From positions 62,001 through 126,000 of the IMG/VR virus record IMGVR_UViG_3300044796_000657: DNA of 64,000 nucleotides; one strand, 5' to 3'. The translations under genes were made by a program, and so were the position numbers. Each line of letters begins with the position of its first letter. Position 1 is the first letter of the stretch. The notes beneath the pieces are model-generated. The model saw only the letters and a program-made list of their open reading frames with translations, had not been told where the DNA came from and searched no databases. Shown here one piece after another: positions 306 to 63,270 of the stretch.

Positions 306-319
306 GGATGTATGGTCAC
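306..319 (-). promoter_or_regulatory. 14-bp element (variant GTGACCATACATCC)
   Basis: Contains the TGA stop of 316..681; ATG at +9. Confidence 0.8.
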
Positions 320-681
320 AGACCGCCCGACTTCTTGAGAACACGCCCGTTAACGGCATTGCCAATTTTTTGCTGTGAAACTTTGATTTTAGGCAGTTTG
401 CGTTTACCAGCCCACTTCAGCATTGTAGGCGTCAAGATAATCGTTGCGTTTGGATCTTTTGAACCAATCGTAATGATACTAGCGTAGAAGCTCACCCTTG
501 CCTCAGTGTTGGCCAATCGCATGATCTTCTCAATGATTGCTGTGGTTTCGGCTTCATTGAGTTTGGGGAATGTATCACCACGCTGAAATGCCGGAATCAA
601 ATCAATGATTCCTTGTCTTGTCGCAACAGCTTGAGCAGCCCTAGCAGGATCGCTCAAGTCGTTTAGTTCTGGGAATGGCAT
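316..681 (-). CDS. Hypothetical protein
   Basis: ORF; AGGAG SD before ATG 681 (MPFPEL). Confidence 0.65.
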   Translation of the reverse strand: MPFPELNDLSDPARAAQAVATRQGIIDLIPAFQRGDTFPKLNEAETTAIIEKIMRLANTEARVSFYASIITIGSKDPNATIILTPTMLKWAGKRKLPKIKVSQQKIGNAVNGRVLKKSGGL

Positions 682-915
682 GTTAACTCTCCTTTTGAAC
701 ATTCTCAAACAAAGTACGGAGAACCATAGAGACTTCGCTGTTTTCGCAATCGTTAGCAATGTCGTCAAATCCAAGTTGTAGATCAGGCTCATCGTATTGG
801 TATGCAAAATTGAGAATTCGCATAACAGTACCGAGAGCCAACAACTAGCTTTTCAGGCGTTCATGATCAACGGTAGCAAATAACTGTTTAAGAGGCTTGC
901 GTGTACTTGTCATGA

Positions 916-1128
916 TTATCTCATACATTGGAAGGGAACGGCAGTGACGTTGATGCTGATGTCATCTGATTTGATGGGGCAAATGACATCACTTGCGATT
1001 TTTTTGGCATGGTCTGCATTCTGAATGCCTTGGACGCCAGAGTTAAGGTAAAACGTAGGCACTTGATGCGTCAAATCGCCTTTTGCTGTGTGATGAACAA
1101 CAGTGGCATCAATGGCATATAGTAGCAT
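916..1128 (-). CDS. Hypothetical protein
   Basis: ORF; GGGAG SD before ATG 1128. Confidence 0.6.
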   Translation of the reverse strand: MLLYAIDATVVHHTAKGDLTHQVPTFYLNSGVQGIQNADHAKKIASDVICPIKSDDISINVTAVPFQCMR

Positions 1129-1151
1129 GACGTTCTCCCTTATAACCATGT

Positions 1152-1165
1152 GGGTGTATGGTCAC
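1152..1165 (-). promoter_or_regulatory. 14-bp element GTGACCATACACCC
   Basis: Exact copy; T/A at +8/+9. Confidence 0.85.
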
Positions 1166-1513
1166 TCATATCATGGGATCAAAGGCAAGGAAAGTGTTAA
1201 ACTTAGGCCATTGTAAATGAGTTGCTAAGTCTTTGTTTTTATTGGCCCACTTGGTATTACAAGCGTAACAAGCCATAACAGTGTTAGGTCGTTCTATAAA
1301 AAGTTCTATATCATCAAATAGAACCCAAACACCATCAAGTGCCCCACCCTTACTAACAGGTCGTATATGTTCAACTGTTGCCATATAATCAGGAAATTGT
1401 ATCCCTTGAGGCTGCGGTTGCGGCAACTCCGTTAAACCAAAACACCAGAAGCATGTTCCCATTTGCTTGAAGAACAAATTATCCAATACCTCTCGCTTTC
1501 TCTTGCTTCCCAC
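1166..1513 (-). CDS. HNH endonuclease-like protein
   Basis: CFWC ... TVEHIRPVSKGG ... NTVMACYACN. Confidence 0.8.
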   Translation of the reverse strand: MGSKRKREVLDNLFFKQMGTCFWCFGLTELPQPQPQGIQFPDYMATVEHIRPVSKGGALDGVWVLFDDIELFIERPNTVMACYACNTKWANKNKDLATHLQWPKFNTFLAFDPMI

Positions 1514-1522
1514 GACAGTTTC

Positions 1523-1645
1523 CTATTTTAATTCAACATCAATTTTACATGATGTTAAGGTTACCACGGAATGGTATTCGGCTTTGACTCGTATTTGCTT
1601 GTGCTGACATCCTGCAAGCAACAAGATAAGCATCCATGCTTTCAT
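1523..1645 (-). CDS. Small putative lipoprotein (40 aa, not in the ORF track)
   Basis: MKAWMLILLLAGCQHKQ...: basic N-terminus, hydrophobic stretch, LAGC lipobox; fills the gap between neighbouring genes. Confidence 0.6.
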   Translation of the reverse strand: MKAWMLILLLAGCQHKQIRVKAEYHSVVTLTSCKIDVELK

Positions 1646-1657
1646 TTGAACCTTTCG

Positions 1658-1927
1658 TTAGTTGATGCCAAGTGCGTGATAATTGGCCCGCACATCGGCC
1701 ATATGGTTTCGGTAAATGTTTGTGTGATTCGGCAACACGCTGACCAGATCATTACGGTGAACTTGAAACAGTTGGGGATACTGCCGAGGGTTGATACCGT
1801 ATTTCACCTTAACCTCTTCAACAGTGAGGTATCCCGGCGATGGCATCCAAGCAGTCTTGCAAACAACCTCCAGAATGATCGCTTCACGACTTCCGGGTTC
1901 AGGAATTTGGCTGAATGCTGCTGCCAT
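1658..1927 (-). CDS. Hypothetical protein
   Basis: ORF with GAGGGG SD, downstream of a 14-bp element. Confidence 0.6.
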   Translation of the reverse strand: MAAAFSQIPEPGSREAIILEVVCKTAWMPSPGYLTVEEVKVKYGINPRQYPQLFQVHRNDLVSVLPNHTNIYRNHMADVRANYHALGIN

Positions 1928-1954: not shown

Positions 1955-1968
1955 GGGTGTATGGTCAC
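1955..1968 (-). promoter_or_regulatory. 14-bp element
   Basis: Exact copy; T/A at +8/+9. Confidence 0.85.
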
Positions 1969-2767: not shown

Positions 2768-2781
2768 GGGTGTATGGTCAC
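2768..2781 (-). promoter_or_regulatory. 14-bp element
   Basis: Exact copy; ATG at +9. Confidence 0.85.
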
Positions 2782-2952
2782 CAATTATCGGGCGGCCCAT
2801 GACATGACGGGCAAAGCGTTCGGCGTGACCACTGGCCAGCAACGCACTTGTATTCATTGCCAACATACCCACATTCATGTGTGAATTTGTTGAAAACGAA
2901 ACCGTTTTGGGTCAAGATTGCTGCTTTGAGAGCGTTCATGTTAACCTCAGAG

Positions 2953-3024
2953 TGGGCCGACCCGGATTCGAACCGAGAACCAAGACATTATGAGTATCCT
3001 GCTCTACCGTTGAGCTATCGGCCC
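2953..3024 (-). tRNA. tRNA with CAU anticodon, most likely tRNA-Ile2 (lysidine type); CCA not encoded
   Basis: GGGCCGA-TAGCTCAACGGTAGAGCA-GGATA-CTCATAA-TGTCT-TGGTT-CTCGGTTCGAATCCGGG-TCGGCCC-A. G1-C72 pair and no GGG/CCC anticodon stem argue against initiator; C4-G69/C5-G68 as in Ile2. Confidence 0.9.
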
Positions 3025-3248: not shown

Positions 3249-4303
3249 TCATAAATTTTGATTTTTGTGATATGTCCGCATTTACAGACATACACTGCAT
3301 GTCTTCCGCTCCACATCTCCTTGAATGGTGAGGGTTTATTGCATTCAGAACACTTCACCTTTTCAGTTAAGAAGTTGATGATTGTATTTTTCAAACGAGT
3401 GAGAAATCTTAACATATTACTCACCTTTTGGGATAAGAGACAAGATAGCATGATCCCTTGACGGATGCGTTGGTGTGTCGCTAGAAAGCCATACTACGCC
3501 ATGTGACCAAACTCCTGTTGCAATCGCATAGTTGATCATCTTCTGACCAGACAATACATTGTCCGGATTTTTACAACGCAATCCCAAATGAGTAGTAATC
3601 GGATGAAGCGTTGGCTCTTGACAAGTAGGGCAAACAAGCCTTGCCATGAATGCTTCAACGTCGGCAAGAGGAATAGCGACCCATCGATTGCCGCCTACTT
3701 TCAACAAACAACCAACATGTATTCCATCCCAAAACATATCCTTGCCATTGATCTTTAACCGTCCTGTCCAACGCAATTTATACCCGTCTGGCAAGGAATT
3801 ACGTGCGCCAGCATCGAGACGTTGGTCGCCAGTGAAGCCGAATTTTTGGAAGTAGTGCCTCTTGCCAGCCACGACCTACTCCTTTGTTGAATTGATTTCA
3901 CCATCCGGGTGAATAGTGTAAGTAATGGTGCCGGGGCCATACCAAACGCTTTTGGTGGTGCCGGGCTTCCAAGCGGTATCAATTTTTTCCAAAACGATCT
4001 TGTGGGTAATCGTCTTGCTTTGAGGAGCCGGAAGATCGTTGTCGGTGTAATTCATACGATTAACTTTCGTAATGATTGTCGTGACCGGATTCATCGTAGA
4101 TTGGCTCCCCATACGGCAATTCATCATTGCAGTAGGCTTCGTGGGCCATGATGCCATCACGAAAACCTTCGGCAAAATCGGTATTACCACGCTTGCTTTC
4201 AGGAAGCACGGTTTCACCACCTCGCCCCAGATTCCAACCTTCCCAATACTGAGTTTCCTTGATCGTCATTGCTGACCCTCGTTAACCATTTGGACAACAA
4301 TAG

Positions 4304-4317
4304 GGGTGTATGGTCAC
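4304..4317 (-). promoter_or_regulatory. 14-bp element
   Basis: Exact copy; T/G at +8/+9. Confidence 0.85.
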
Positions 4318-5095
4318 TGGTTGTTTGGCTTTCTGTCTCTTATGATCTTTAACAGCATCTTTATCGTTGAGACGCCTAATTGTTCGACTGACATTACAAC
4401 CACGAATGCCAACCAAACAAACGCCCAAATTGGCAGCGTAACGAATAGTATAAGTACCATCGCTTTCTTTTGTCGCTTTGTAAGACATTAGATTTTACCT
4501 ATTCTGTCTCGGTTGTAGGAGGCAGTCATGTCCTCTTGATCGGTGGTCGTGACGACATTGCTGCCTTCAAACGCCACGATGGTATACACTTCCCCTACCG
4601 TCAAAGGAGCATATTTACCAGTGTAGCCTGTTGGCTTCTGAAGCAATCGTACCGACTCCCCCACTTTGAAGGTAGGATGTTTGATGGTCTTGCCGTGGGC
4701 CGGGCAAAAACCAACTTGATCGCACTTACAGACGACACCGGGACAAACAGCTTTGCCATTGTCGCCAAGGATATAATCGAGCATCTTAAGCATGTGCTGA
4801 CTCCGGTTTGTTGGTATCAATCATTGCCACGATTTTGCGAAGCCTTGTGATGTCCTGCGTTTCAAGCCAGTTCATCGGCAAGGATGAAATTAACAGTAAC
4901 CCCAAATTGAAGGCTTCATCACAAGTCAGAACGAGTTCCAATTCCCGATCCTTGATTGCCGCTGGCCCTGCTGTCACCTTTTGTTTGACATAAAGGCGAG
5001 TTACACCGTCAGTAATGGCGTTGCGGCGTGATGAAATCGGGTTCGTAACCAGTTGTGATGTTGTATCTTTCATGACAGCCTCTTGTTAACGTGAG

Positions 5096-5109
5096 GGGTG
5101 TATGGTCAC
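5096..5109 (-). promoter_or_regulatory. 14-bp element
   Basis: Exact copy; contains stop of 5106..5741. Confidence 0.85.
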
Positions 5110-5741
5110 TCAGGGATGGTAGCCAATATCGTATCAATATCGGCCAATTGGCCTTTGGTTACATGGGCTTGTCGTTCAAACAGATTGCCGAGATGCGGCC
5201 ATACGTGATCAGGAGTGATGCCATTACGCCAAGCCCGCAAACGTTGAGCGGCACCTTGAACTTTTTTGTTAGGCAAGTGTAGTTGGGCACATACATTCCA
5301 AATTGTTCCAATATGATCTTCGTAATCTGGATCTGACTCTGTGAATTGTTGAGCCTGCGTTGTGATCAATGGCTTGTTGCGAACACATCGCCCAAGGATT
5401 GTTCGGCACTTTTTGGCCGTTTCTTCCAATCCATAGTTAACACGATATTTGGGATCGAGTTCGTTAGGGGACATCCACGTTGACGCACCAGTACGAGCAA
5501 CGCTGATTTCATCTTCTGCCATACAGTCAAAATTTCCGACAAACGGTGCTGTGTCCATTGGAACAATGAGATACATATCATCAATGATGTTAACTACCAA
5601 CCATGACAATCCAATTGGATCGGTAAGGTCGGGCAGTACAAACACATCACCGATAGCAGCCGGGCCGTCTTTGGGCGGCTTGGCATTGGTGAGCTTAGCT
5701 GCGGCATCAGCAACGGCGGCTTTGATTTTGGTGGTGTTCAT
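5106..5741 (-). CDS. Hypothetical protein (probably leaderless)
   Basis: 211-aa ORF flanked by two elements; ATG at +9. Confidence 0.7.
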   Translation of the reverse strand: MNTTKIKAAVADAAAKLTNAKPPKDGPAAIGDVFVLPDLTDPIGLSWLVVNIIDDMYLIVPMDTAPFVGNFDCMAEDEISVARTGASTWMSPNELDPKYRVNYGLEETAKKCRTILGRCVRNKPLITTQAQQFTESDPDYEDHIGTIWNVCAQLHLPNKKVQGAAQRLRAWRNGITPDHVWPHLGNLFERQAHVTKGQLADIDTILATIPE

Positions 5742-5749
5742 AACTCTCC

Positions 5750-5763
5750 GGGTGTATGGTCAC
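5750..5763 (-). promoter_or_regulatory. 14-bp element
   Basis: Exact copy; contains stop of 5760..6086; ATG at +9. Confidence 0.85.
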
Positions 5764-6086
5764 AGTTGAGTTTTGCGGCCAGTGAGTACATTCACAACAA
5801 CTTCATTTTGTCCGAAAGCCGCACGCATTTCGTACATCTCTTCGGCGGTTGGTTCAACGCCTTCTTGCTGTTGACGATATTCTTTAACGAATGCTTGAAT
5901 CTCTTGTGATTGCGCCAATTTTTGGGCCGCACGATCTACCGGAATACCGTAAGATTCGCAGGAGTCCAATGGGCAGCAGCGATCCGTTTCCACCCATCGC
6001 CAAACCTTACCATCATCGGTATAGGCTTGACTGTCAAATGTCCAATTGCTATGACTTTTGGTGAAAGTTTCAGTGCGTCGTGCCAT
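5760..6086 (-). CDS. Hypothetical protein
   Basis: ORF between two elements; likely start MARRTE. Confidence 0.65.
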   Translation of the reverse strand: MARRTETFTKSHSNWTFDSQAYTDDGKVWRWVETDRCCPLDSCESYGIPVDRAAQKLAQSQEIQAFVKEYRQQQEGVEPTAEEMYEMRAAFGQNEVVVNVLTGRKTQL

Positions 6087-6128
6087 TTGAATACTCGGTG
6101 AGAGAGGATGTAACCAAGTTAACAAGTA

Positions 6129-6142
6129 GGGTGTATGGTCAC
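6129..6142 (-). promoter_or_regulatory. 14-bp element
   Basis: Exact copy. Confidence 0.85.
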
Positions 6143-7097
6143 TAAATGCCAATGCTTTTTATCATTTGTTTATACTTTGTGGATTTTGATTTCAATTGGA
6201 GGGCAGTGCGTATGACTACCTTGGCAGCAATACGTTTGAAGGCGAAGGATTTGTCCTTAAGTATTTCCGTGATTTGGAAAATGGTAAGAATTTCCTCCAA
6301 GAAAATCTCATCTTCTGGCTTCGATGCCCGCAAAACTGGAAGATTCTTCAATAGATCAAAGGCACGAACGAGTTGTTCATCGGTCACTGGGTTCTGGGGT
6401 ATTTTCATGGCATCCACGCAATGAATTTACAAGTTAGGGTAAGTTCGATTCGTTGGATTTCATCTTCACGACAATACACAACGAACCGAATGCCGTGTTC
6501 AAACATCGCTTTGCGAAACATTGGAATTCACCTCAGCCCGTGAAAGAACGTATCGGATGTCACCAAAGATTGTTAAGATCATATCATCGGCGTCTTTGAA
6601 ATCGCCATTACCAACATATCTGAGAATGAGACGTTGGCTCCTGTCGCTGTATGGAACACAAACATACTTCAATCCCATCACAAGGCTTCCAATTTCAAGA
6701 TAGCTCATGGCATCCTACCGGTAAAGGGGAACAATCATTTCTTCAACAGTAGTAGTTATGAAGACATCACCCTTATTAACAGTATTGCGGTTGCCTCGTT
6801 CGTAAGCGTATTCGCCAACAGCGATTTTGCGGTAAATGGCGTGGGGTTCGGGAATGAAGCAGAACAGATCGTTAACATTCAAGCCGCTGAATGGAATAGC
6901 CATGCCTTCATTGACAAAGCGGGAAATTGTTATCAGTCTGGGGTGTTCGGTATTGTTGCGATTGATCTTGATAGCACAAGACTCGCAATAGAGTCGATGA
7001 TCAAGTGAGTGATGGCAATTATCGTGGGGATTGGTACACCGAGTTACCGAACACTTAGGATTTTCTGGCATTGTTTATTCCTCATTGGTACCTATTA

Positions 7098-7111
7098 GGG
7101 TGTATGGTCAC
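7098..7111 (-). promoter_or_regulatory. 14-bp element
   Basis: Exact copy; contains stop of the GNAT gene. Confidence 0.85.
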
Positions 7112-8546: not shown

Positions 8547-8585
8547 GACAAGCATCTCGTAAGGAAGTTGAGGGAACATCATGGA

Positions 8586-8599
8586 GGGTGTATGGTCAC
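8586..8599 (-). promoter_or_regulatory. 14-bp element
   Basis: Exact copy; contains stop of 8596..9222. Confidence 0.85.
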
Positions 8600-9247: not shown

Positions 9248-9261
9248 GGGTGTATGGTCAC
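9248..9261 (-). promoter_or_regulatory. 14-bp element
   Basis: Exact copy; overlaps a 20-bp palindrome at 9230-9249. Confidence 0.85.
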
Positions 9262-9520: not shown

Positions 9521-9534
9521 GGGTGTATGGTCAC
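9521..9534 (-). promoter_or_regulatory. 14-bp element
   Basis: Exact copy; contains stop of the CCA-enzyme gene. Confidence 0.85.
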
Positions 9535-10241: not shown

Positions 10242-10255
10242 GGATGTATGGTCAC
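10242..10255 (-). promoter_or_regulatory. 14-bp element (variant GTGACCATACATCC)
   Basis: One mismatch; C/A at +8/+9. Confidence 0.8.
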
Positions 10256-12952: not shown

Positions 12953-13615
12953 TTACACATAGCACGGTGTATGGTCACTCGTACGGTTTGAGGCGTCACC
13001 AATTAATCTTTCTGGATAAAGGAAATGGCATGCAATGGGGCATTTGACATCTTCATCGGCTTTTCCTGTGTAAAGAACTAAAGCACTCGTCGGAATTGTG
13101 GGAGGAACAATCTTCTTTTTGTCCATCTTCCTTGCTATTGACCACGCTTCAAAAGCAACCACTTCCGCATCGGGATTCCGTTTTTCTTTATCCCACCACG
13201 CCTTAAAGAAAAGGATATTTTGTGCGTGTGCGGTTAACGCATTAGAAGTATCATGACACCATCCATGCAAGCCACGATCTTTCTGTTGTGGCGCATACGC
13301 CGTGACATAACGACCTTTCATCAAGCTAATGATTTCTTTCTTTCGCAATGGCGTTGAAGGCTTGCTGTGTTTTTTGGGCATTTTTCCTTTGATACACTCA
13401 CGAATGCTCATAACATCCGTAACAACAGTGATCCATTTTTCATTGGTGCTTTTCAAGGCATTAATAACTGCCCAATATTCTGCTGCTACGGAATCATTAT
13501 TGATTTCAGAGAAATGCAAACCATAATCATAAGTGCCATTAGATGCGCACCATGCCCATCCATAGAAATCACGGGTTGCGCTTCCGTCTGCGTAGATAAT
13601 CATAATGACACTCAA
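12953..13615 (-). CDS. RNase H-like protein
   Basis: IYADGS, AAEYWAVINAL, VVTD, HD: acidic catalytic pattern. Confidence 0.7.
   Translation of the reverse strand: MSVIMIIYADGSATRDFYGWAWCASNGTYDYGLHFSEINNDSVAAEYWAVINALKSTNEKWITVVTDVMSIRECIKGKMPKKHSKPSTPLRKKEIISLMKGRYVTAYAPQQKDRGLHGWCHDTSNALTAHAQNILFFKAWWDKEKRNPDAEVVAFEAWSIARKMDKKKIVPPTIPTSALVLYTGKADEDVKCPIACHFLYPERLIGDASNRTSDHTPCYV
12965..12978 (-). promoter_or_regulatory. 14-bp element (variant ...CACCG)
   Basis: One mismatch; T/G at +8/+9. Confidence 0.8.
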
Positions 13616-14136: not shown

Positions 14137-14691
14137 TTATGTGGGTGTATGGTCACGCTTGGGCATAATATCCCAATCCACACTCAACCATTCCCCCGCT
14201 TGAATGAACGTTTCTCCTCGTTCTTTAATAGTGCGATAGGTGTCTGCTAACGCAAGAGCCATGCGATCCGGACGACCAATTTCAGAAGTGGGAACTGCCC
14301 TGCTAATCGTTCCAGTCTTACTGCCAAAGGTAGTGACGATAGCACTCTCTGTATGTCGTGGAGCAACCTTGCTGTGGCCGTGGTTGGGAGTAGCAAGATA
14401 CGGACAAACCTTTGCCGCATATGTTGCACATTCAAGGTGCATTGGCCCATCAACGAAACGCCGATGCTTCATACACTTCGGCCCACCAATGAAGGCGAAC
14501 GGAGGCATCATTCTTTGACCGCAAAGATGGCAAAGGTTTTTATTTAACGCTTCTGTTCGGTGAGCTTGATGGACAACCTTGAAGTCTGGTATTTTGTCTT
14601 CCCCAACGAAGACTGTGTAGTGAACCACATATCCCCTGTAGAGAGGGAATTTTTTCATACGTTCGGGAATAGGAATGGCAGAAATTTCCAT
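14137..14691 (-). CDS. Hypothetical Cys/His-rich protein
   Basis: CHLCG, FIGGP, PMHLECA, CPYL. Confidence 0.7.
   Translation of the reverse strand: MEISAIPIPERMKKFPLYRGYVVHYTVFVGEDKIPDFKVVHQAHRTEALNKNLCHLCGQRMMPPFAFIGGPKCMKHRRFVDGPMHLECATYAAKVCPYLATPNHGHSKVAPRHTESAIVTTFGSKTGTISRAVPTSEIGRPDRMALALADTYRTIKERGETFIQAGEWLSVDWDIMPKRDHTPT
14143..14156 (-). promoter_or_regulatory. 14-bp element
   Basis: Exact copy inside the 3' end of 14137..14691. Confidence 0.85.
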
Positions 14692-15643: not shown

Positions 15644-15657
15644 GGGTGTATGGTCAC
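15644..15657 (-). promoter_or_regulatory. 14-bp element
   Basis: Exact copy; contains stop of 15654..15866. Confidence 0.85.
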
Positions 15658-16469: not shown

Positions 16470-16483
16470 GGGTGTATGGTCAC
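16470..16483 (-). promoter_or_regulatory. 14-bp element
   Basis: Exact copy. Confidence 0.85.
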
Positions 16484-18146: not shown

Positions 18147-18160
18147 GGGTGTATGGTCAC
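18147..18160 (-). promoter_or_regulatory. 14-bp element
   Basis: Exact copy; contains stop of 18157..18435. Confidence 0.85.
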
Positions 18161-19291: not shown

Positions 19292-19305
19292 GGGTGTATG
19301 GTCAC
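19292..19305 (-). promoter_or_regulatory. 14-bp element
   Basis: Exact copy. Confidence 0.85.
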
Positions 19306-20192: not shown

Positions 20193-20206
20193 GGGTGTAT
20201 GGTCAC
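20193..20206 (-). promoter_or_regulatory. 14-bp element
   Basis: Exact copy; contains stop of 20203..20451. Confidence 0.85.
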
Positions 20207-21268: not shown

Positions 21269-21282
21269 TGGTGTATGGTCAC
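21269..21282 (-). promoter_or_regulatory. 14-bp element (variant ...CACCA)
   Basis: One mismatch; contains stop of 21279..21662. Confidence 0.8.
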
Positions 21283-21698: not shown

Positions 21699-21712
21699 GG
21701 GTGTATGGTCAC
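21699..21712 (-). promoter_or_regulatory. 14-bp element
   Basis: Exact copy. Confidence 0.85.
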
Positions 21713-25941: not shown

Positions 25942-25955
25942 GGGTGTATGGTCAC
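25942..25955 (-). promoter_or_regulatory. 14-bp element
   Basis: Exact copy; contains stop of 25952..26425. Confidence 0.85.
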
Positions 25956-27265: not shown

Positions 27266-27279
27266 GGGTGTATGGTCAC
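27266..27279 (-). promoter_or_regulatory. 14-bp element
   Basis: Exact copy; contains stop of 27276..27767. Confidence 0.85.
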
Positions 27280-28429: not shown

Positions 28430-28443
28430 GGGTGTATGGTCAC
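28430..28443 (-). promoter_or_regulatory. 14-bp element
   Basis: Exact copy. Confidence 0.85.
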
Positions 28444-32665: not shown

Positions 32666-32679
32666 GGGTGTATGGTCAC
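32666..32679 (-). promoter_or_regulatory. 14-bp element
   Basis: Exact copy. Confidence 0.85.
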
Positions 32680-35610: not shown

Positions 35611-35624
35611 GGGTGTATGGTCAC
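35611..35624 (-). promoter_or_regulatory. 14-bp element at the strand switch
   Basis: Exact copy; T/G at +8/+9. Confidence 0.85.
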
Positions 35625-54470: not shown

Positions 54471-54484
54471 GGGTGTATGGTCAC
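54471..54484 (-). promoter_or_regulatory. 14-bp element
   Basis: Exact copy; pyrimidine-purine step shifted by 1 nt. Confidence 0.8.
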
Positions 54485-54787: not shown

Positions 54788-55525
54788 TCATGCCTGAGAG
54801 GGTGTATGGTCACTCAATGCTTGAAGCCAATGGATAAGCCTTTTGGCACCATGTAGGTCTTTTGAATTGTGTTTAACTAATACTGCCGACATATCAAAAT
54901 GACAGTTGCGATGAAAAAGTCGGCCATCTACAACATAGAAGCGGTCACGGGCGAAATTTGGATCACGCCACTTGCTAAGTTTTTCGCCCTCTTGATGTTG
55001 GCCGAATAAGCCAAACCGCTCATCCACTCGCTCTTCAACTCGTTGCCAAAAATAAGTTCTAAAACCATCAGGCATTGGCATTTCAACACATTGATTGATG
55101 TTAACACTTCGCTCTTTATTGTAATCTGGTTTCGCACTGTCAATTGTCTTACAAAGCAATAAAAACTTGGAAACAGCAGGCTCTACCAATTCCATACGAA
55201 GTCGCTGCTTTTCATCTTCTTTCATCCCAATATATTTACGAAGACTAACATCAGGCCGTGTTTCCTTAATGACTGATGCCTTGCCAAAAAAACCACCGCC
55301 ACCCTTAACGATACTACGTCCAGCTTGTGGCTTATCCCACTCGTCCACAATGGGCCTAAACTCTTTGTGAAACTTCTCAAACGAAACTTTACGAATTTTG
55401 CCATTTTCATCAACCAAATCCAATTTTTTTGCTTTCAATCCATGTTCGGAGCCAATGTAAAGCCACAAAGAGTTGTCAGTTGTGCGATGCATGGTCTGAG
55501 GAACGTAAAGCATAAAAGCCTCCAT
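54788..55525 (-). CDS. Hypothetical protein
   Basis: 245-aa ORF. Confidence 0.65.
   Translation of the reverse strand: MEAFMLYVPQTMHRTTDNSLWLYIGSEHGLKAKKLDLVDENGKIRKVSFEKFHKEFRPIVDEWDKPQAGRSIVKGGGGFFGKASVIKETRPDVSLRKYIGMKEDEKQRLRMELVEPAVSKFLLLCKTIDSAKPDYNKERSVNINQCVEMPMPDGFRTYFWQRVEERVDERFGLFGQHQEGEKLSKWRDPNFARDRFYVVDGRLFHRNCHFDMSAVLVKHNSKDLHGAKRLIHWLQALSDHTPSQA
54800..54813 (-). promoter_or_regulatory. 14-bp element
   Basis: Exact copy; ATG of 54513..54791 at +9. Confidence 0.85.
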
Positions 55526-55533
55526 TTTCCATC

Positions 55534-56163: not shown

Positions 56164-57114
56164 TCATTTAGCGGCTATCCTTTTTTCGTCCAAGTAAAGA
56201 TGTTCTGGTCTAACACATAGATCGTTATCACAGGTGTGTAATACTCGCTTACCTTCCGGAATATCACCATAAGCCAATCCGTACGCTACTCTGTGCGCCA
56301 ACTTTGGCGAATGATCTACACTGAAATGGCCGAACCCATTATGATTGTACGCCGTCCATTCCCAACACTCGCCGCTCTTGTCAACCTTCTTCCAGAATCT
56401 CTCATCAATCGATTCCTTCGAACGATTCGGTAATCTCTCAATCTTTTCTGGTGGATGATATTCGGCATCATACCAACTGTGATTGTAAACCACCGCATGG
56501 ATCGTCTGGCGGCTTGTATTGTATTGCTTTGCCATTTCACCAATGTTAACAGGCCCGGCTACAACCGCTGCTCTAATAGCATCAACATCCGGCTTTGTTA
56601 ACTTCGCATTCACCAAACCTAAGTCGGCACGTTCCAAAGCAATAAGGTGTTCTGGATTGTGGCATTCTTCATTCTTGCAACTTCTCGTCACTTCTTGCGA
56701 TTTTCTGAGAGGGGATTTGAAGAGTTCATAAATTCCACGAACCAACAATCTCATACCTGTTGGCAGAGATAGAGACTTCGGCTTTTCCCCTTGCCAAACC
56801 CAACAATCATCTACGACCTTGACACAGGATTGAATCCGTGCTTTCAGGTCTTCAACAGGAACAGTTGATTTGAGTGAGTTGGCCAAACGGAGGTGTTCGG
56901 ATTTAATACAAAGGGGATTTTGACAGGTGCGTGTGATGTGGGCACCCTTTGGAATATTTCCGTGTGTTAATTCATAAGCGACACGATGGGCAATGAGTCT
57001 CCCACCCGCCATTTGGAAAACGCCGTATAATGGCTTGGGGTTAAGTGTCCCTTTCCAAATCAAACAATCGCCTTCTACTGCTGCATTAGCCCAAAATTCT
57101 TCTTGGTTTATCAT
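56164..57114 (-). CDS. HNH homing-endonuclease-like protein with three HNH units and an HTH
   Basis: CLIWKG/CWVWQG/CWEWTA; AHRVAY twice; C.N..C...HL three times. Confidence 0.85.
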   Translation of the reverse strand: MINQEEFWANAAVEGDCLIWKGTLNPKPLYGVFQMAGGRLIAHRVAYELTHGNIPKGAHITRTCQNPLCIKSEHLRLANSLKSTVPVEDLKARIQSCVKVVDDCWVWQGEKPKSLSLPTGMRLLVRGIYELFKSPLRKSQEVTRSCKNEECHNPEHLIALERADLGLVNAKLTKPDVDAIRAAVVAGPVNIGEMAKQYNTSRQTIHAVVYNHSWYDAEYHPPEKIERLPNRSKESIDERFWKKVDKSGECWEWTAYNHNGFGHFSVDHSPKLAHRVAYGLAYGDIPEGKRVLHTCDNDLCVRPEHLYLDEKRIAAK

Positions 57115-57339
57115 AGGATTTTCTTAAGTAAAAAATGTTTCATCAGTATAATGTTCTTTTTTGTATATTCAAGTACAGGTTATCGAGTTTGCGATTTCAA
57201 AGTCGCCATTGCAACCTGATACAATTCTTTGCCCAATCTTCGTTCTAGGCTTTGACGAATATCTTGTGGCAGTTTAGGATTACGAAGTTGTTCTAAGATC
57301 AAATCCAAGCGATCATTTTTTAACATGTTAATCCCCAAT

Positions 57340-57367
57340 AAACAAAACCGGCCCGAAGGCCGGTCTT
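57340..57367 (-). terminator. Intrinsic terminator with UUCG tetraloop
   Basis: AAGACCGGCC-TTCG-GGCCGGTTTTGTTT. Confidence 0.85.
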
Positions 57368-57370
57368 AAC

Positions 57371-57718
57371 TCACGAAAGTGTAGCAAGGATTTCTTTGAC
57401 TGTCTGCTCACCGTATTTTTCTGTCCACTGTTTATACTGCTTGACCATATTGACAATTTCAATTGCCACTTCCGCAGTATTAACCACTGGCGGCTTTTCT
57501 GCACGCCCAAGGTATTGCCGATTTTTGAATGGTCTGGTTGTTCCTATGATCTTAGCACGGCCTGAAGATATGTAATTTTTAGGAACAGAGTGCCCGAATT
57601 GGTCTTGAATGTACCTCTGAATGTCTTCGGTACTTCTAAGTCCGGTATTACAAGCGGCCTTAATAGACGCAAATGTATTGAACTTCTTGACCGTTTCAAC
57701 TTTAACTTCTTCCATCAT
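57371..57718 (-). CDS. Small putative DNA-binding protein; resembles 8172..8546
   Basis: STEDIQRYIQDQFGHSVPKNYISSGR; GGAGG SD. Confidence 0.55.
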   Translation of the reverse strand: MMEEVKVETVKKFNTFASIKAACNTGLRSTEDIQRYIQDQFGHSVPKNYISSGRAKIIGTTRPFKNRQYLGRAEKPPVVNTAEVAIEIVNMVKQYKQWTEKYGEQTVKEILATLS

Positions 57719-58421
57719 GACATTCCTCCTCCAGAGTAGTGTTATTAGAACCAACGCCCAATTTGCCTGCTCGAAATTTCCATGCCATCATTTTAGATGT
57801 ATCTTGATAAATTTTTGGCAATCCAATTTTGGCATCAGGAAACATCATTTGAAACATGGTTTTGTAAGTAGCAATTAACTCGTTTTTCGCCATCCTCAAA
57901 TTTCGACTATATGTTTTTGGATATGAGGATTCCATCCAAGATTTAAGGTTTGAATAATCAGCGAATCCACGGGGGATACAATAAAACGTGAAACTCAAAA
58001 AGGCATTTTCAGCTAATCGGGGCCGTAAATGTCCAAAAAGCCAAGAGAAAAGATCGCCGTTAATGTTGCCGCATAGATCGGCATTGAGCAAATCTACCGG
58101 TGGCTCTTCATCCGTCAAAACGACAGAACTCAATTCGCCATAGATACACTTAACCAAATCTTTATTGATACACTTTTGACGCACTAGACTATTTTTGACT
58201 TTAATCATTTTGTCAAAATTTGGCCCGTTTCGTTCAACAAATTTCAAAAGAGTTTGATTGCCAATCACCAACTTTTCCAACGCTTTCTTTACACACACAC
58301 CATCGCTACTTGGTAAAAAAATAGCATGTTTGGCTTCTTGCTTAATGTTGAAAGTCCAATTTCTTATTTCGTCTTTTGCCGGTCTTTTTTGAGCACACCA
58401 AGGATTATTAATACCCTTCAT
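57702..58421 (-). CDS. Hypothetical protein, possibly methyltransferase fold
   Basis: FVERN, VDLLNADLCG; weak. Confidence 0.45.
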   Translation of the reverse strand: MKGINNPWCAQKRPAKDEIRNWTFNIKQEAKHAIFLPSSDGVCVKKALEKLVIGNQTLLKFVERNGPNFDKMIKVKNSLVRQKCINKDLVKCIYGELSSVVLTDEEPPVDLLNADLCGNINGDLFSWLFGHLRPRLAENAFLSFTFYCIPRGFADYSNLKSWMESSYPKTYSRNLRMAKNELIATYKTMFQMMFPDAKIGLPKIYQDTSKMMAWKFRAGKLGVGSNNTTLEEECHDGRS

Positions 58422-59566
58422 TTCTCAGCCTCGAAGTAAAATTCATTTACTGATTATACTTCCAGTCAAGCGATTATCAAGGTTTTATAAAATGAGTCAT
58501 TTTGAAACTAAAAATACGTCAATGGGATCGAAAGTCCTAGTCAGCCAAAAATTCATCCACGCTATTGCACGTTTGTCCCCACCGAAAATTAATATGGGTA
58601 TCCAAGCCAATAACACGAACATGCCAATCGTAGCAAGCCACAAAAGAACCAACACAATTCCAAAACAATACCTAAGCCATTTTTTCATCTATGGTACACC
58701 CATTACTTTCTTTTGAACACACATACAAAACCTAGAAACACATAATGCCCATCTATCAACGTAAGGCTCACCTGTAATTAATTGCATTATCCAACACGGC
58801 CCTAAGACCATTATAGCAACCAAAATAGTCACTATGGCCAAATGGAACAAAAACAAGCATACCAATGCATATCTGATACTTTGCCACACTTTACTGATTT
58901 TCATCTGGTTCTTCTCCAAGTGATTGTAGGAAGCACTCCCACCCATGAGACCATTTTCTATCTCTTGCATGTCCGAAAAATTTTTCTATAACGATTAGAA
59001 AAAACCACGGTGGCAACCATAACAACAAAATAACCAAAGCGACAGGAAACATCACTACATGTCGCATCGCAGTCCAAATCTTAATGTTCATTTCTTTGGC
59101 TCAATCTCCAACTTTGTATACAAAAAGTTATTGGTGTTATCCGCACTGAGATAAGTGCATTGGATAATGAAGGGCTGTTTGACTTTCATCCAAATTTCCA
59201 CACTATCTCCATAAGTGCTGCCGAAACGACTGCTACTCTTAACAACTTTCACTTCTAATATCGTGACGAGTTCATAATCATCGCACGTTTTGAAATCCCA
59301 TTTTTGGCCCCACTTGGCATTCAATTTCAGACAAGTAATACCATCAGGCTTTAATTTGACGATTTGTTTATGATTTTTCTCTGTCACTAAATTGGTAATT
59401 AACTCTTTGTCGTTTTGGTTTTGAACACAACTGTAGACGCCGCAAGTAAGAGAGAACATAAGGATAAGAGAGAACAGAACCCACAAAATGGTTTTCATGA
59501 CATTTTTCCTGTATTGTTTAGTAATTGTACAACAACAAACAACACAGATCAATACTAATTAATTAT

Positions 59567-60776: not shown

Positions 60777-60802
60777 ATCGTCACCTTATAAAAATAAAAA
60801 AA

Positions 60803-61099
60803 TTATTTCCTAATAAGAAAACCATCGGCAATAGTTGTTTCGGGTACGCAAATCCATGTCCGCAATTTAGGATTAATCGACATTCGATGTATAGCAATTG
60901 CGGCAATTAAATATGATTTCCCGCTACCAGTAGGAAGGTTATTGATTCGAAATGGCTTATCGTGTTGATGAAGCCACCCTTCCGTCTGTCCTTGTCGTAG
61001 AAGATCATAACCATTAGCTTTTTGATCGGGTAATGCTGACTTCAGGAGGTTCCAACCTAGTTTTGCAGCAGTGGAAATGTTAAAGTTTTTATTGTTCAT
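60803..61099 (-). pseudogene. Truncated SF2 helicase (N-terminal part only)
   Basis: LRQGQ, LPTGSGKS, WICVP, then stop. Confidence 0.6.
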
Positions 61100-61917
61100 C
61101 TACAAAGTATAACAATTAATTTTATGAATTCAATTTCGTTAACTTGGATTTTCTTTTCAAAACTCGCAGCGTTCTACCGCCTTCAATTGTTAATTTCCCA
61201 TTCGCTCTAATAAGACCGAACGAAACAAGCAGATCAAAATTAGGGCCACTCTTAACCCTCTTTTCGACAACCGACGAACCTGCCTTTTTGAGCAAGGCAA
61301 ATTGACCTGCCGTTAAAATCACTTCACCATTTCTTATTTTTTGACGAATGTTGCTCATTTGATCTCCTTTGCCAAGACGTAATACCACCTGTCCGGTTCC
61401 ACATAATCCAACATCCACAAGTGCCCACCGATATTAACTGTGCGGTGTGGCCTTTCAACTATCTCGCCACTGCTCAATGCCCATCCACCTTCACAAACAG
61501 CCGCATAAATGACAATTTGGCTAATATCCCCCAATTTCATTGTAGGTGCTGACAGATTTCGTTCTATGGAAGCACGAATACAAGATAATCCCGTCTTGTA
61601 TTGGATGAGCGTGATTTCGCTTTTTGTAATACCGATGACAATGTAATACATGCGGTTGCGAGAACGGCTACTATAGCCCTTGCCATTGGTGAATTCATCT
61701 GCCGCCATTTCAATAGCGGTGTTAATTTTCAAGCCTTCCGGCAGAATATAGAACATTCCGGGCGTATTGGCTTGTGTCCAAAACTTGCGATCCATACCAC
61801 CGGCTGAATTTTGATTCGGGGTGATGGTTGCTACCCAATTGTTACCATTCTGGGTAAGCAAAGGTACCTTAGTCATCGCACCATCTTCAAGTGGTATCTT
61901 AACTATAGGGCGTTCCA

Positions 61918-62535
61918 TTATTTACCTCTCAAATGGCTTAACTTATCAGCAATTTGATTACCGCCACGGGGAATCCATTTCACACGTTCACCAAACTTGG
62001 TAGAAGCAAACTGATTGTCAGTATAAATTTCATCATTGTATTCAGGCGAAGGATATTGATCCAATGCAAACTGAATACCCAATTCTTCCGCTTCTTGTGA
62101 ACTTTCGCACGCAACGTTTCGCACAAACACATCCATATCACCGTTTACCCATTTGTGAATTACGGCAATACGTGCTTTCCCCAATTTCCAACCCGCATCA
62201 ACAAAGATCCCTGCCGAAATAATAGTCTGTTTATCAGTTAAGAGTGGTTCAACCTCAACCGACAGATTTTCAATGGCACGAATGATTTTTGCCGCACCTT
62301 CATCGGTTTGTCTGTAGTTGTAACGAAGAAGTTCGTCAAGGAGAGTTCTTGTTGAAATTATCCTTGCTGACCGCCAGCCGGTGGGCATAAATTTGATTTC
62401 GCCATCTTTGTTAACCCAAACGTTATGCTTGCCACCGGCGTGCGGAATCTGCATGTGATACGAAGTATGTACTTCAACGCTATAACCATGAGCGGTAAGA
62501 AGGTCAACAACGTAATTGGCATTTATCCGGTTCAT
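61918..62535 (-). CDS. Protein with C-terminal RNase H-like domain (probably leaderless)
   Basis: IFVDAG, SQEAE..GI..AL, IYTDNQ, WIPRGGNQIADKLS. Confidence 0.8.
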   Translation of the reverse strand: MNRINANYVVDLLTAHGYSVEVHTSYHMQIPHAGGKHNVWVNKDGEIKFMPTGWRSARIISTRTLLDELLRYNYRQTDEGAAKIIRAIENLSVEVEPLLTDKQTIISAGIFVDAGWKLGKARIAVIHKWVNGDMDVFVRNVACESSQEAEELGIQFALDQYPSPEYNDEIYTDNQFASTKFGERVKWIPRGGNQIADKLSHLRGK

Positions 62536-62543
62536 GTTATGTG

Positions 62544-62557
62544 GGGTGTATGGTCAC
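62544..62557 (-). promoter_or_regulatory. 14-bp element
   Basis: Exact copy; ATG at +9. Confidence 0.85.
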
Positions 62558-62837
62558 AGTTCCCTACATTTCATCAGATTTGATAATCTTAATTTCATAC
62601 TGTCCTAGCTTATCTTCGTCCATGTATGATAAGGCTAAGTAGCAATCAGCACGGGTTTTGAAACATGCCAAAGGCATATCTTCTGCCGCTTTGCCACTGA
62701 CTATGTCATAACAGGGAATGACACCACTGCCCCAATTAATGTCCGTGTAGTAAGCACGATAGCCATCATCCTTTACAAGATCGGCATGACGAAGTTCAAT
62801 GGCATAACGCATAAGTTTGCTCCTTAATTAAACTTAT

Positions 62838-62851
62838 GGGTGTATGGTCAC
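62838..62851 (-). promoter_or_regulatory. 14-bp element
   Basis: Exact copy. Confidence 0.85.
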
Positions 62852-63256
62852 AGGTGAGGCTTCATGATATTCTATCCACAAGGATGTAAGATAATTGGAT
62901 TAGCCAAACGATAGGCAAAACTTGTGTGAGGAAATCCCGTTTTTCGCATGAGTTTTGGCAATTGAACTTTATGACGAACCAAAGTACCAACTCTGAACAT
63001 TTCAAATAACGCAGCATTGGCTAAGTTCGAAATGACATCATTGGTTTTTGTTGTTCTCATCGTTCCCTTAAATTTCAAATGAAACTCATAATGAAAAACT
63101 TTTGATGAATTGGCAATTTCACCATTTTCATGTAACCATTTTACAATCCAATCATGCATTTCTTGCTTTTTAGCTTTTGCATATGCAGTTAACATTTTCA
63201 TTCCTGTAAAGGTGTGAGACGAATGGGATCATCCATGTTAACCTCTTGTTGAAGTG

Positions 63257-63270
63257 AGGGGTATGGTCAC
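63257..63270 (-). promoter_or_regulatory. Degenerate element (GTGACCATACCCCT)
   Basis: First 10 nt exact; contains stop of 63267..63488. Confidence 0.65.

What the first reader, a model, noticed from the sequence alone, without database searches (positions are those of the whole stretch)
316..63270. The element supplies the TGA stop of the preceding gene, producing cassette-like element-gene-element units
Seen: the TGA in G-TGA-CC terminates ORFs ending at 316, 5106, 5760, 7108, 8596, 9531, 15654, 18157, 20203, 21279, 25952, 27276 and 63267. Other stops abut or overlap it (1166, 6142, 10256, 21712). In others it is translated as a C-terminal DHTP or VTIHP. Several units are one gene between two direct repeats (5106-5741, 5760-6086, 8596-9222, 9266-9493, 9531-10226, 21279-21662). 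Inference: this may be simple compaction, or the repeats may serve as recombination points for gain, loss and shuffling of small genes, as proposed for repeated promoter cassettes in T4-like phages.
Basis: partly seen in the sequence, partly recalled or inferred. Interest (0 to 1): 0.6.

Follow-up and report, generated by a model that had tools for sequence, protein, structure and literature searches.

The report
Repeated promoter-like motif overlapping gene stops
A 14-base motif repeated about 100 times in the early-gene region of an uncultured giant peat phage is most likely the phage's own promoter, and it sits so close to the preceding genes that its built-in TGA often serves as their stop codon; this is tidy genome packing rather than a new mechanism.

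Summary
GTGACCATACACCC occurs 32 times in the window, all on the minus strand, against 0.39 expected by chance. There are 73 to 104 copies in the 430-kb virus record, clustered at 20-130 kb. No copy lies inside a gene body. In 14 window copies (30 genome-wide) the motif's TGA is the stop of the upstream gene. That is 30 of the 38 genes that reach the motif, against 1/3 expected (p=1e-8).

The motif is best read as a phage-specific promoter:
- It has a sharp 5' edge and always points the same way as the genes.
- The next start codon lies 36-56 nt downstream.
- Seven copies directly follow strong intrinsic terminators.
- One copy heads a gene block after a strand switch.
- It shares the intergenic gaps, almost mutually exclusively, with canonical sigma70-type promoters.

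The phage encodes two sigma factors; no T7-like or multisubunit RNA polymerase was found. A 595-kb relative lacks this motif. It carries its own motif (AGCTGTAC core, 134 copies) in the same arrangement, again with stops fused to the 5' edge.

Using the TGA as a stop is therefore compaction. The recombination-cassette idea could not be tested. No diverged close relative exists in the collections, every other contig is identical, and only contigs, not reads, were available.

The parts
306..319 (-). Motif copy (GTGACCATACATCC, 1 mismatch). Its TGA (316-318) stops the upstream ORF 316-681. The next gene starts with ATG exactly at motif position 22 (297).
1152..1165 (-). Motif copy. The TGA of ORF 1166-1513 abuts its 5' edge. 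The next gene (916-1128) starts 37 nt from G0. The 3' half forms a hairpin with positions 1-7.
1955..1968 (-). Motif copy. The TAA of ORF 1970-2446 lies 4 nt before it. The next gene is 1658-1927.
2768..2781 (-). Motif copy. Its TGA ends a doubtful 53-aa ORF (2778-2939). The next gene (2448-2759) starts with ATG at position 22 and has no SD.
4304..4317 (-). Motif copy translated as VTIHP in the C-terminus of ORF 4282-4488. A paralogue at G000 41282-41479 also contains a copy.
5096..5109 (-). Motif copy. Its TGA stops ORF 5106-5741 (211 aa). The next gene is 4786-5073.
5750..5763 (-). Motif copy. Its TGA stops ORF 5760-6086 (108 aa). The next gene starts with ATG at position 22 (5741).
6129..6142 (-). 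Motif copy. The TAG of ORF 6142-6417 overlaps G0. The next gene is 5760-6086.
7098..7111 (-). Motif copy. Its TGA stops the GNAT acetyltransferase gene 7108-7449. The next gene is 6715-7071.
8586..8599 (-). Motif copy. Its TGA stops ORF 8596-9222 (208 aa).
9248..9261 (-). Motif copy. The TAA of ORF 9266-9493 lies 7 nt before it. The next gene is 8596-9222.
9521..9534 (-). Motif copy. Its TGA stops the tRNA nucleotidyltransferase-like gene 9531-10226. The next gene is 9266-9493.
10242..10255 (-). Motif copy (1 mismatch). The TGA of ORF 10256-10534 abuts it. The next gene is 9531-10226. It forms a strong hairpin.
12965..12978 (-). Motif copy (last base G). ORF 12953-13615 reads through it, with its stop 23 nt from G0.
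14143..14156 (-). Motif copy. ORF 14137-14691 reads through it. The next gene is 13863-14108.
15644..15657 (-). Motif copy. Its TGA stops ORF 15654-15866. The next gene is 15123-15608.
16470..16483 (-). Motif copy. ORF 16464-16775 reads through it. The next gene is 15892-16443.
18147..18160 (-). Motif copy. Its TGA stops ORF 18157-18435. The next gene is 17812-18105.
19292..19305 (-). Motif copy. The TGA of ORF 19307-19795 lies 4 nt before it. The next gene is 18698-19267.
20193..20206 (-). Motif copy. Its TGA stops ORF 20203-20451. A perfect TTGACA-N17-TATAAT promoter follows 10 nt downstream.
21269..21282 (-). Motif copy (last base A). Its TGA stops ORF 21279-21662. The next gene is 20791-21243.
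21699..21712 (-). Motif copy. The TAG of ORF 21712-21987 overlaps G0. The next gene is 21279-21662.
25942..25955 (-). Motif copy. Its TGA stops ORF 25952-26425. The next gene is 25351-25911.
27266..27279 (-). Motif copy. Its TGA stops ORF 27276-27767 (zinc-ribbon UPF0547). The next gene is 26856-27248.
28430..28443 (-). Motif copy lying free in the gap. The upstream stop is 29 nt before it (ORF 28470-29261). The next gene is 27771-28409.
32666..32679 (-). Motif copy lying free in the gap, with the upstream stop 33 nt before it. The next gene starts 38 nt from G0.
35611..35624 (-). Motif copy at the head of the minus-strand gene block, next to a plus-strand island, with no upstream gene on the same strand. 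A sigma70-like promoter and then gene 35051-35527 follow.
54471..54484 (-). Motif copy lying free in the gap, with the upstream stop 31 nt before it. The next gene starts 33 nt from G0.
54800..54813 (-). Motif copy. ORF 54788-55525 reads through it, and its TGA overlaps the next gene's ATG at position 22 (ATGA).
62544..62557 (-). Motif copy. An upstream TAG lies 9 nt before it. The next gene (61918-62535) starts with ATG at position 22 and has no SD.
62838..62851 (-). Motif copy lying free in the gap. The stop of ORF 62872-63201 is 23 nt before it.
63257..63270 (-). Degenerate copy (GTGACCATACCCCT, 2 mismatches). Its TGA stops a 73-aa ORF ending at 63267. The next gene is 62872-63201.

Best explanation
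The element is a compact, phage-specific promoter, or at least the core recognition site for the phage's transcription-initiation machinery. It is used many times inside a long array of small early or accessory genes that all run the same way, in an uncultured huge phage from peat (614-kb contig). The recognised sequence is GTGACCATACA (invariant), then CCC, then a weaker Y-n-A-T-n-G-t-T-R-n-n-A, about 26 nt in all, with nothing conserved upstream. Transcription would start at about motif position 16-23. What is shown: the copy number, strand, position, spacing, terminator context and complementarity with sigma70-type promoters. What is inferred: promoter activity itself, the start site, and which protein reads the motif. 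Because the signal begins with G-TGA-CC and has a hard 5' edge, deletions that pack genes tightly can run the upstream gene right up to it. Only the frame that meets TGA ends the protein without a tail that would run across the promoter and the next ribosome-binding site, so that frame is kept. The 'element-gene-element' units are simply genes with their own promoter in a region that has a promoter every 1-3 genes.
For: 1. There are 32 copies in the window against 0.39 expected, all on the gene strand. The genome holds 73 copies (up to 1 mismatch) and 104 exact 11-mers, clustered at 20-130 kb. All of the few plus-strand copies tested precede plus-strand genes.
2. No copy lies inside a gene body, although 92% of the genome is coding.
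3. The logo has a sharp 5' edge and a fuzzy 3' side. The next start codon lies mostly 36-56 nt from G0. SD cores begin at positions 23-31 in 17 of 29 copies, so an RNA that carries them must start at or before about position 23.
4. All six ATGs at position 22 open long ORFs.
5. Seven copies lie 18-24 nt after strong intrinsic terminators with 9-12-bp GC stems and a T-run. Transcription has to restart there.
6. The copy at 35624 heads a gene block after a strand switch.
7. Of the 90 same-strand gaps of 30 nt or more at 20-130 kb, 45 carry the motif and 15 of the other 45 carry a TTGACA-N16-18-TATAAT promoter; only 0.55% of coding control segments do. Only 3 gaps carry both. The motif therefore fills the same niche as ordinary promoters.
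8. It is the only strongly repeated upstream word in the genome.
9. Two sigma70-family genes are present.
10. The 595-kb relative LR756511.1 (DNA polymerase III alpha 40% identical) lacks this motif. It has 134 copies of its own AGCTGTAC motif in the same layout: clustered at one genome end, pointing with the genes, 25-45 nt before the ATG, with stops fused to the 5' edge.
Against: There are no data on transcript 5' ends. The only RNA run is held as contigs, which span the motifs and cannot show starts, and DNA carry-over is possible. The motif resembles no known sigma consensus, and its -10-equivalent region is GC-rich. No dedicated phage RNA polymerase was found (PF00940, PF00562 and PF00623 negative), and no AsiA or MotA. 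However, 184 kb of the parent contig lie outside the record and could not be searched. Neither sigma gene is linked to the motif by any test. Tandem arrays and face-to-face copies around the helicase gene would also suit a DNA-binding-site reading. The ATGs at position 22 could equally be served by termination-reinitiation, since a stop lies within 31 nt upstream in all six cases.
Confidence: 0.65

Rival explanations
1. The element is an asymmetric operator or 'stoperator'. A phage repressor would bind the 14-mer as a monomer and block initiation or elongation in an orientation-dependent way, silencing the early region as in Cluster A mycobacteriophages.
For: It is a 14-nt asymmetric site with many copies in short intergenic spaces, strictly oriented with transcription, and often touching stop codons. 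Those are the defining traits of stoperators (PMC9283540). Tandem arrays and inverted pairs near the helicase gene look like operator clusters. IMG/VR labels the record 'provirus'.
Against: Copies are confined to 20-130 kb and are nearly absent from the other 300 kb, which includes the replication genes. Seven copies sit just after strong terminators, and one sits where no upstream transcription arrives, so there is nothing to stop there. The motif does not overlap the sigma70-like promoters; it replaces them in the gaps. The constrained distance to the next SD and ATG is not expected of a roadblock. No repressor was identified.
Confidence: 0.1
2. The element works at RNA level. The transcribed sequence GUGACCAUACACCC, together with a partly complementary AUGGUUA, would form a stem-loop that serves as a processing, stabilising or protein-binding site between cistrons.
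For: Positions 16-22 tend to pair with positions 1-7: a mean of 4.4 of 7 pairs, against about 1.5-3.4 in other registers. G.T wobbles are preferred over G-C, which makes the structure strand-specific. Twenty-one of 73 copies reach 6-7 pairs. The motif lies between cistrons, and metatranscriptome contigs span it.
Against: The 5' arm and loop are invariant while the 3' arm is degenerate. Most copies fold weakly (dG above -3 kcal/mol). There is no covariation, since one arm never varies. Copies just downstream of terminators would seldom be transcribed from upstream. Rfam finds nothing. No known endoribonuclease has 11-14-nt specificity (own knowledge).
Confidence: 0.1
3. The element's main role is as a recombination site bounding mobile gene cassettes (PeSL-like modular shuffling), with promoter activity secondary.
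For: The motif-rich 20-100 kb region shares only 5 of about 190 genes with the nearest relative, against 25-50% in core regions. There are several single-gene units. A few copies share 30-76 nt of flanking identity (promoter plus leader). Three small paralogue families have members bounded by copies. PeSLs in T4-type phages set the precedent (PMC2839356, PMC4122927).
Against: The shared identity is usually only 14-26 nt, which is short for homologous exchange. No structural variant, junction or circle was seen, though only contigs and clonal data were available. The motif carries a stop in only one of its three frames, so it is not a universal 'terminate whatever comes before' boundary. High gene turnover is typical of phage early regions whether or not such motifs are present.
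Confidence: 0.07
4. The copies are replication-origin iterons or partition sites, and the intergenic copies are incidental.
For: Tandem arrays with 40-54-bp spacing flank the helicase gene at G000 28.7-29.0 kb and 32.0-32.4 kb.
Against: About 90 further copies stand singly in front of genes across 100 kb, at a fixed orientation and distance from start codons. No origin function explains that.
Confidence: 0.03

Closest known systems
PeSL (promoter-early stem-loop) cassettes of T4-type phages (Arbiol et al. 2010, PMC2839356; Comeau et al. 2014, PMC4122927)
   Same: Both are repeated regulatory motifs concentrated in ORFan-rich, hyperplastic regions. Both begin at the stop codon of the upstream gene, precede small genes, and are associated with a stem-loop containing G-T pairs. 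Single genes are often bracketed by two copies.
   Different: PeSLs are host sigma70-consensus promoters (-35 and -10) plus clear stem-loops, spanning tens of bases. Here the motif is a non-sigma70 14-26-nt sequence with only a weak hairpin tendency, and true sigma70-like promoters sit in other gaps. The recombination role of PeSLs was shown by indel boundaries and mini-circle PCR; nothing comparable could be tested here.
Phage-specific promoters read by phage polymerases or phage sigma factors (the T7-group 23-bp promoters, the T4 late TATAAATA promoter with gp55, SPO1 middle and late promoters). Own knowledge.
   Same: Both are contiguous, near-invariant motifs without a -35 element and with a sharp upstream edge. 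The start site lies close to the 3' end, the motif is reused many times within arrays of genes running the same way, and it sometimes overlaps the end of the upstream gene. The phage here encodes its own sigma-family proteins.
   Different: The sequence is unrelated. No T7-like polymerase was detected. The copy number (about 100) and density (one per 1-3 genes) are unusually high.
Stoperators of Cluster A mycobacteriophages (PMC9283540, PMC6550527)
   Same: Both are 13-14-nt asymmetric sites present in many copies in short intergenic spaces, with an orientation tied to the direction of transcription.
   Different: Stoperators are spread over the whole genome and need upstream transcription to act on. 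Here the copies are regional, follow terminators, and have a constrained distance to the next start codon. No repressor is known.
The AGCTGTAC motif of the uncultured 595-kb phage LR756511.1
   Same: It has the same layout in the nearest available relative: 134 copies clustered at one genome end, oriented with the genes, 25-45 nt before the ATG, with TAA, TGA or TAG fused to its 5' edge.
   Different: The sequence is entirely different. It is often preceded by T-rich terminator tails and followed by a longer conserved leader. It is itself undescribed, so it is a parallel case and not a reference.

Membership tests
PeSL cassettes (T4-type phages) | Contains a host sigma70-consensus early promoter (-35 and -10 boxes) | tested here: not met
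   The logo shows no -35/-10 pair. Reading GTGACC as the -35 and T21A22 as the -10 would put the start near position 33, downstream of the SD in 17 of 29 copies. Canonical TTGACA/TATAAT promoters occupy other gaps.
PeSL cassettes (T4-type phages) | Adjacent stem-loop structure | tested here: inconclusive
   Positions 16-22 pair with positions 1-7 more than in other registers (mean 4.4 of 7), but only about 10 of 73 copies fold below -7 kcal/mol.
PeSL cassettes (T4-type phages) | Located in hyperplastic, ORFan-rich regions and flanking ORFans | tested here: met
   Only 5 of about 190 genes at 20-100 kb have a homologue in the nearest relative, against 25-50% in core regions. Most flanked genes have no Pfam or PHROG hit.
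PeSL cassettes (T4-type phages) | Indel or replacement breakpoints between close relatives fall at the motif; circles join two copies | not testable with these tools
   No diverged close relative was found. Other contigs are identical. The runs are held only as contigs, and the two 'joints' reported are cross-matches of motif copies.
T7-like single-subunit RNA polymerase promoters | A cognate T7-like RNA polymerase is encoded by the phage | tested here: not met
   PF00940 has no match in the 430-kb record, although no control genome matched either. 184 kb of the parent contig could not be searched. The large ORFans have no PDB, Pfam or PHROG match.
T7-like single-subunit RNA polymerase promoters | A contiguous, roughly 20-nt conserved motif ending at the start site, with no -35 element | tested here: inconclusive
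   The architecture fits, but the start site has not been measured.
Phage sigma-factor-dependent promoters | The phage encodes sigma70-family proteins | tested here: met
   A 261-aa ORF has regions 2 and 4 and matches SigA/RpoS; a 173-aa ORF also has regions 2 and 4.
Phage sigma-factor-dependent promoters | The motif is recognised by that sigma factor | not testable with these tools
   This needs in vitro transcription or a reporter assay.
T4 middle promoters (MotA/AsiA sigma appropriation) | MotA and AsiA homologues, and a sigma70 -10 (TAnnnT) 12 nt downstream of the box | tested here: not met
   There is no AsiA or MotA C-terminal domain. The T at the -7 equivalent is not conserved, and the implied start site conflicts with the SD positions.
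Stoperators (Cluster A mycobacteriophages) | A 13-mer-class asymmetric site in short intergenic spaces, oriented with transcription | tested here: met
Stoperators (Cluster A mycobacteriophages) | Sites distributed throughout the genome and acting on incoming transcription | tested here: not met
   Of the 96 copies with up to 2 mismatches, 90 lie at 20-140 kb. Seven follow terminators and one heads a gene block.
Stoperators (Cluster A mycobacteriophages) | A cognate monomeric immunity repressor | not tested
   No candidate was searched for.

The most novel reading that the evidence does not exclude
In huge phages, lineage-specific promoters that are not of the sigma70 type may also act as the exchange points of a PeSL-like cassette system. 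Genes would travel as 'promoter-leader-ORF' units and recombine at the 14-26-nt motif, which would explain why the motif-dense 100 kb is almost entirely ORFans. A second unexcluded twist is that an as yet unrecognised polymerase or factor, possibly encoded in the unsearched 184 kb of the contig, reads the motif.
Probability: 0.15. Interest if true: 0.65.

Novelty: new member of a known kind. Interest (0 to 1): 0.4.

Why it matters
Huge phages of more than 500 kb are known only from metagenomes, and almost nothing is known about how they time gene expression. A motif that marks about 100 transcription units and alternates with host-type promoters gives a direct handle on this. It predicts a regulon of about 200 mostly unknown early or middle genes, and a testable pairing with one of two phage sigma factors. 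It also suggests a general rule, that each lineage has its own motif, because a 595-kb relative shows the same layout with a different sequence. For annotation, it explains why so many genes here end in TGA inside a repeat, and it warns against reading the repeats as mobile-element ends without evidence.

Tried and rejected
- A megablast of 20 kb of the window against cultured and deposited phages found nothing.
- Searches for relatives with the 211-aa ORFan, the DNA polymerase and the 1953-aa protein found nothing, or only the same contig.
- Motif scans of the viral and metagenome contig collections returned only single, chance-level hits.
- Cluster look-ups and encoding contigs from other samples or runs returned sequence identical to the genome, with one SNP in one contig. 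No strain-level comparison was therefore possible.
- Read laying on 4800-10300 showed only contigs. The two reported 'joints' have thousands of unrelated letters between the sides and come from other motif copies in the same 64-kb contig, so they are not excision junctions. The RNA contigs give no transcript starts.
- The reading 'GTGACC = -35, TAnnAa = -10' was rejected because the implied start site lies downstream of many SD sequences.
- A CRISPR-array reading of the tandem copies was rejected. The repeat unit is only about 14-23 nt and the spacers about 20 nt.
- The protein atlas search on the 1953-aa ORFan gave no usable hit.
- The parent JGI contig cannot be searched as a whole.

Full report
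**What the window is.** The window is bases 62,001-126,000 of a 430,229-bp IMG/VR virus record with 43% GC. The record is bases 240-430,468 of a 614,480-bp contig from a peat metagenome (JGI 3300044796, Ga0480561_0000004). It encodes a DNA polymerase III alpha-like polymerase, helicases, a Dam-type methylase, an HNH endonuclease, a tRNA nucleotidyltransferase and very many ORFans. The nearest deposited genome is LR756511.1, an uncultured 595-kb 'huge phage'; its polymerase is 40% identical over 93% of the length. My codon-usage gene caller finds about 767 genes and 92% coding density, with stop usage TAA 407, TGA 289 and TAG 71.

**Checking the observation.** GTGACCATACACCC (up to 2 mismatches) occurs 32 times in the window, always on the minus strand, which is the gene strand. 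Shuffles give 0.39. Genome-wide counts are:
- 73 copies with up to 1 mismatch, 66 of them on the minus strand.
- 96 copies with up to 2 mismatches.
- 104 exact copies of the 11-mer GTGACCATACA.
- Nearly all lie between 20 and 130 kb.

The 32 window copies break down as follows:
- In 14, the motif's TGA is the upstream stop.
- In 8, a stop lies within 9 nt of the 5' edge or overlaps G0.
- In 5, the upstream gene reads through the motif as VTIHP or DHTP.
- In 4, the motif lies free in the gap.
- In 1, there is no upstream gene on that strand.

Of the genes that reach the motif, 14 of 19 in the window (p=3.8e-4) and 30 of 38 genome-wide (p=1e-8) are in the TGA frame, against 1/3 expected. No copy lies in the body of a gene.

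**Anatomy of the motif.**
- The logo has a hard 5' edge, with zero information upstream of G0. Positions 0-10 are invariant and positions 11-13 are CCC.
- In the 28-47 kb part of the genome these three positions vary (AGCC, AACC, ATCC and others).
- A weaker tail follows: Y14, A16, T17, G19, T21, R22, A25.
- The tail is partly complementary to positions 1-7. The mean is 4.4 of 7 pairs, against about 1.5-3.4 in shifted registers, and G.T is preferred over G-C. Only about 10 of 73 copies make a stable hairpin.
- The next gene's start codon is mostly 36-56 nt from G0. SD cores begin at positions 23-31 in 17 of 29 copies.
- Six copies have ATG exactly at position 22. All six open long ORFs of 72-288 aa, mostly without an SD.

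**Evidence that it is a promoter-type signal.**
- Seven copies at 32-46 kb sit 18-24 nt downstream of textbook intrinsic terminators, with 9-12-bp GC-rich stems followed by a T-run. Genes follow these copies, so transcription has to restart there.
- The copy at window 35624 heads the minus-strand block next to a plus-strand island.
- Among the 90 same-strand gaps of 30 nt or more at 20-130 kb, 45 carry the motif. Of the other 45, 15 carry a TTGACA-N16-18-TATAAT promoter with up to 2 mismatches, against 0.55% of coding control segments. Only 3 gaps carry both.
- The motif and ordinary host-type promoters therefore divide the same niche. This looks like two promoter classes interleaved in an early region.
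- The motif is the only strongly repeated upstream word in the genome.
- The SD positions and the ATGs at position 22 place any start site at or before about position 23. That excludes the sigma70-like reading (GTGACC as -35, T21A22 as -10, start near position 33) and points to a compact promoter without a -35 element.

**Who reads it is unknown.** The record has two sigma70-family genes:
- One of 261 aa, with regions 2 and 4, whose best PDB matches are SigA and RpoS.
- One of 173 aa, also with regions 2 and 4.

It has no T7-like polymerase, no beta or beta-prime domains, and no AsiA or MotA. The largest ORFans (1953, 1487 and 994 aa) match nothing. 184 kb of the parent contig could not be searched.

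**A parallel in the relative.** LR756511.1 does not contain the motif above chance level. Its most repeated words centre on AGCTGTAC, with 134 copies against 18 expected. These copies:
- cluster in the first ~100 kb and run with the genes;
- are usually preceded by T-A/G-A/C (TAA, TGA) and often by T-rich terminator tails;
- are followed by TWAA, a conserved leader, an SD and an ATG 25-45 nt downstream.

Upstream stops pile up at offsets -3 to -1 (16 of 104). Two related huge phages thus use unrelated sequences in the same arrangement. That is expected of promoters co-evolving with a phage-specific reader. The fusion of stops to the 5' edge recurs independently of the TGA in this particular motif.

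**Why the TGA is used.** The four bases G-T-G-A are invariant even where no gene ends at them: after terminators, in arrays and at the head of a gene block. They are therefore conserved as part of the signal, not as a stop. In a genome that is 92% coding, deletions that remove spacer bring genes up against the hard 5' edge. A gene entering in the TGA frame ends cleanly. In the other two frames it gains 6-12 residues that run across the promoter and the next ribosome-binding site. Selection against such tails explains the 79% share of the TGA frame. The motif has no stop in the other two frames, so it is not a universal cassette terminator. Exchange inside the motif would keep each upstream gene's own junction, so the frame bias says nothing about recombination.

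**The recombination idea.**
- No diverged relative sharing the motif exists in the viral or metagenome contig collections. None exists among 5.8 billion proteins for the proteins tried.
- The contigs found in a second JGI sample and two Logan runs are identical to the genome, apart from one SNP in one of them.
- The one reads call returned contigs only. Its two 'joints' are 23-nt cross-matches to other motif copies in the same contig, separated by thousands of letters.

Circumstantial points in favour are:
- The motif-rich 20-100 kb region shares 5 of about 190 genes with the relative, against 25-50% in core regions.
- Some copies share 30-76 nt of promoter-plus-leader identity.
- Three small paralogue families are bounded by copies.

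Against it, typical identity is only 14-26 nt, and high turnover is normal for phage early regions. I rate a primary recombination role as unlikely but not excluded.

**Rivals.** A stoperator-like operator fits the asymmetry, orientation and intergenic position (PMC9283540). It does not fit the regional confinement, the copies after terminators, or the fixed distance to start codons. An RNA stem-loop or processing site fits the wobble-biased pairing. It does not fit the invariant 5' arm paired with a degenerate 3' arm, or the terminator context. Iterons fit only the arrays beside the helicase gene.

**Verdict.** The element is most likely a new, lineage-specific promoter of a huge phage (confidence about 0.65). 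Its use as a stop codon is a by-product of compaction. The cassette and recombination reading remains untested.

Noticed in passing
G000 28,690-29,030 and 32,000-32,370 (outside the window; L012:8690-9030 and 12000-12370): Tandem arrays of the 11-mer core, spaced 40-54 bp, flank a helicase gene (29921-31951, minus strand). Plus-oriented copies lie downstream of the gene and minus-oriented copies upstream, so both arrays point towards it. They could be stacked promoters, operator clusters or origin iterons.
   Followed up: partly
G000 about 28.7, 32.2, 34.9, 40.3 and 45.9 kb (outside the window): A composite module recurs five times: a minus copy, then 10-25 nt, then a plus copy followed by a conserved TGAAAGAAACGG, then about 55 nt, then a second minus copy facing the plus copy, often preceded by a 12-bp-stem terminator. 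Two copies facing each other about 85 bp apart suggest a short antisense RNA or mini-ORF unit.
   Followed up: partly
window 3248, 11015, 12415, 13656, 17072, 20182, 24383, 26604, 30530, 35591, 44676, 48383, 55562, 58480 (first base of the -35 box, minus strand): Near-consensus TTGACA-N16-18-TATAAT promoters sit in intergenic gaps that mostly lack the 14-mer. The one at 20182 is a perfect match. This implies a host with a standard sigma70 consensus and a second, host-read promoter class in the same gene array.
   Followed up: yes
whole record / parent contig: IMG/VR labels the 430-kb record 'provirus', but it is bases 240-430,468 of a 614,480-bp contig. Its closest relative is a 595-kb free phage genome. 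The whole contig may therefore be one roughly 0.6-Mb phage whose right-hand 184 kb were trimmed off as 'host'.
   Followed up: partly
LR756511.1 (L042-L071), mainly bases 1-100,000: This relative has its own repeated motif, (T)TATAA-AGCTGTAC-TWAA, in 134 copies. It is often followed by a conserved leader (…CTTTACCTCTAACGCAAAGGAG…) before the ATG. The motif appears to be undescribed.
   Followed up: partly
window 2952-3024 (-): A tRNA-Met (CAT) gene lies among the small early genes (ARAGORN and Rfam agree). T-arm words recur in the genome, so further tRNA genes are likely elsewhere.
   Followed up: no
window 35,600-41,700: A plus-strand island interrupts the minus-strand array. It holds a glycosyltransferase-9-like gene (36120-37112), two ORFans and a 604-aa ORFan in a stretch with higher GC (0.49) and strong negative GC skew. 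It may be a later insertion.
   Followed up: no
G000 53,308-59,169 (-), just left of the window: A 1953-aa ORFan has an internal ~550-nt tandem duplication at 75% identity. It has no homologue in any library searched, apart from the JGI gene call for the same gene (P0013, 1928 aa, 100% identical).
   Followed up: partly
window 4800-10300: A peat metatranscriptome run from a different study holds 76% of the sampled words of this stretch as identical short contigs. The phage, or its DNA, was therefore present in an RNA library, which is consistent with active infection in situ.
   Followed up: partly
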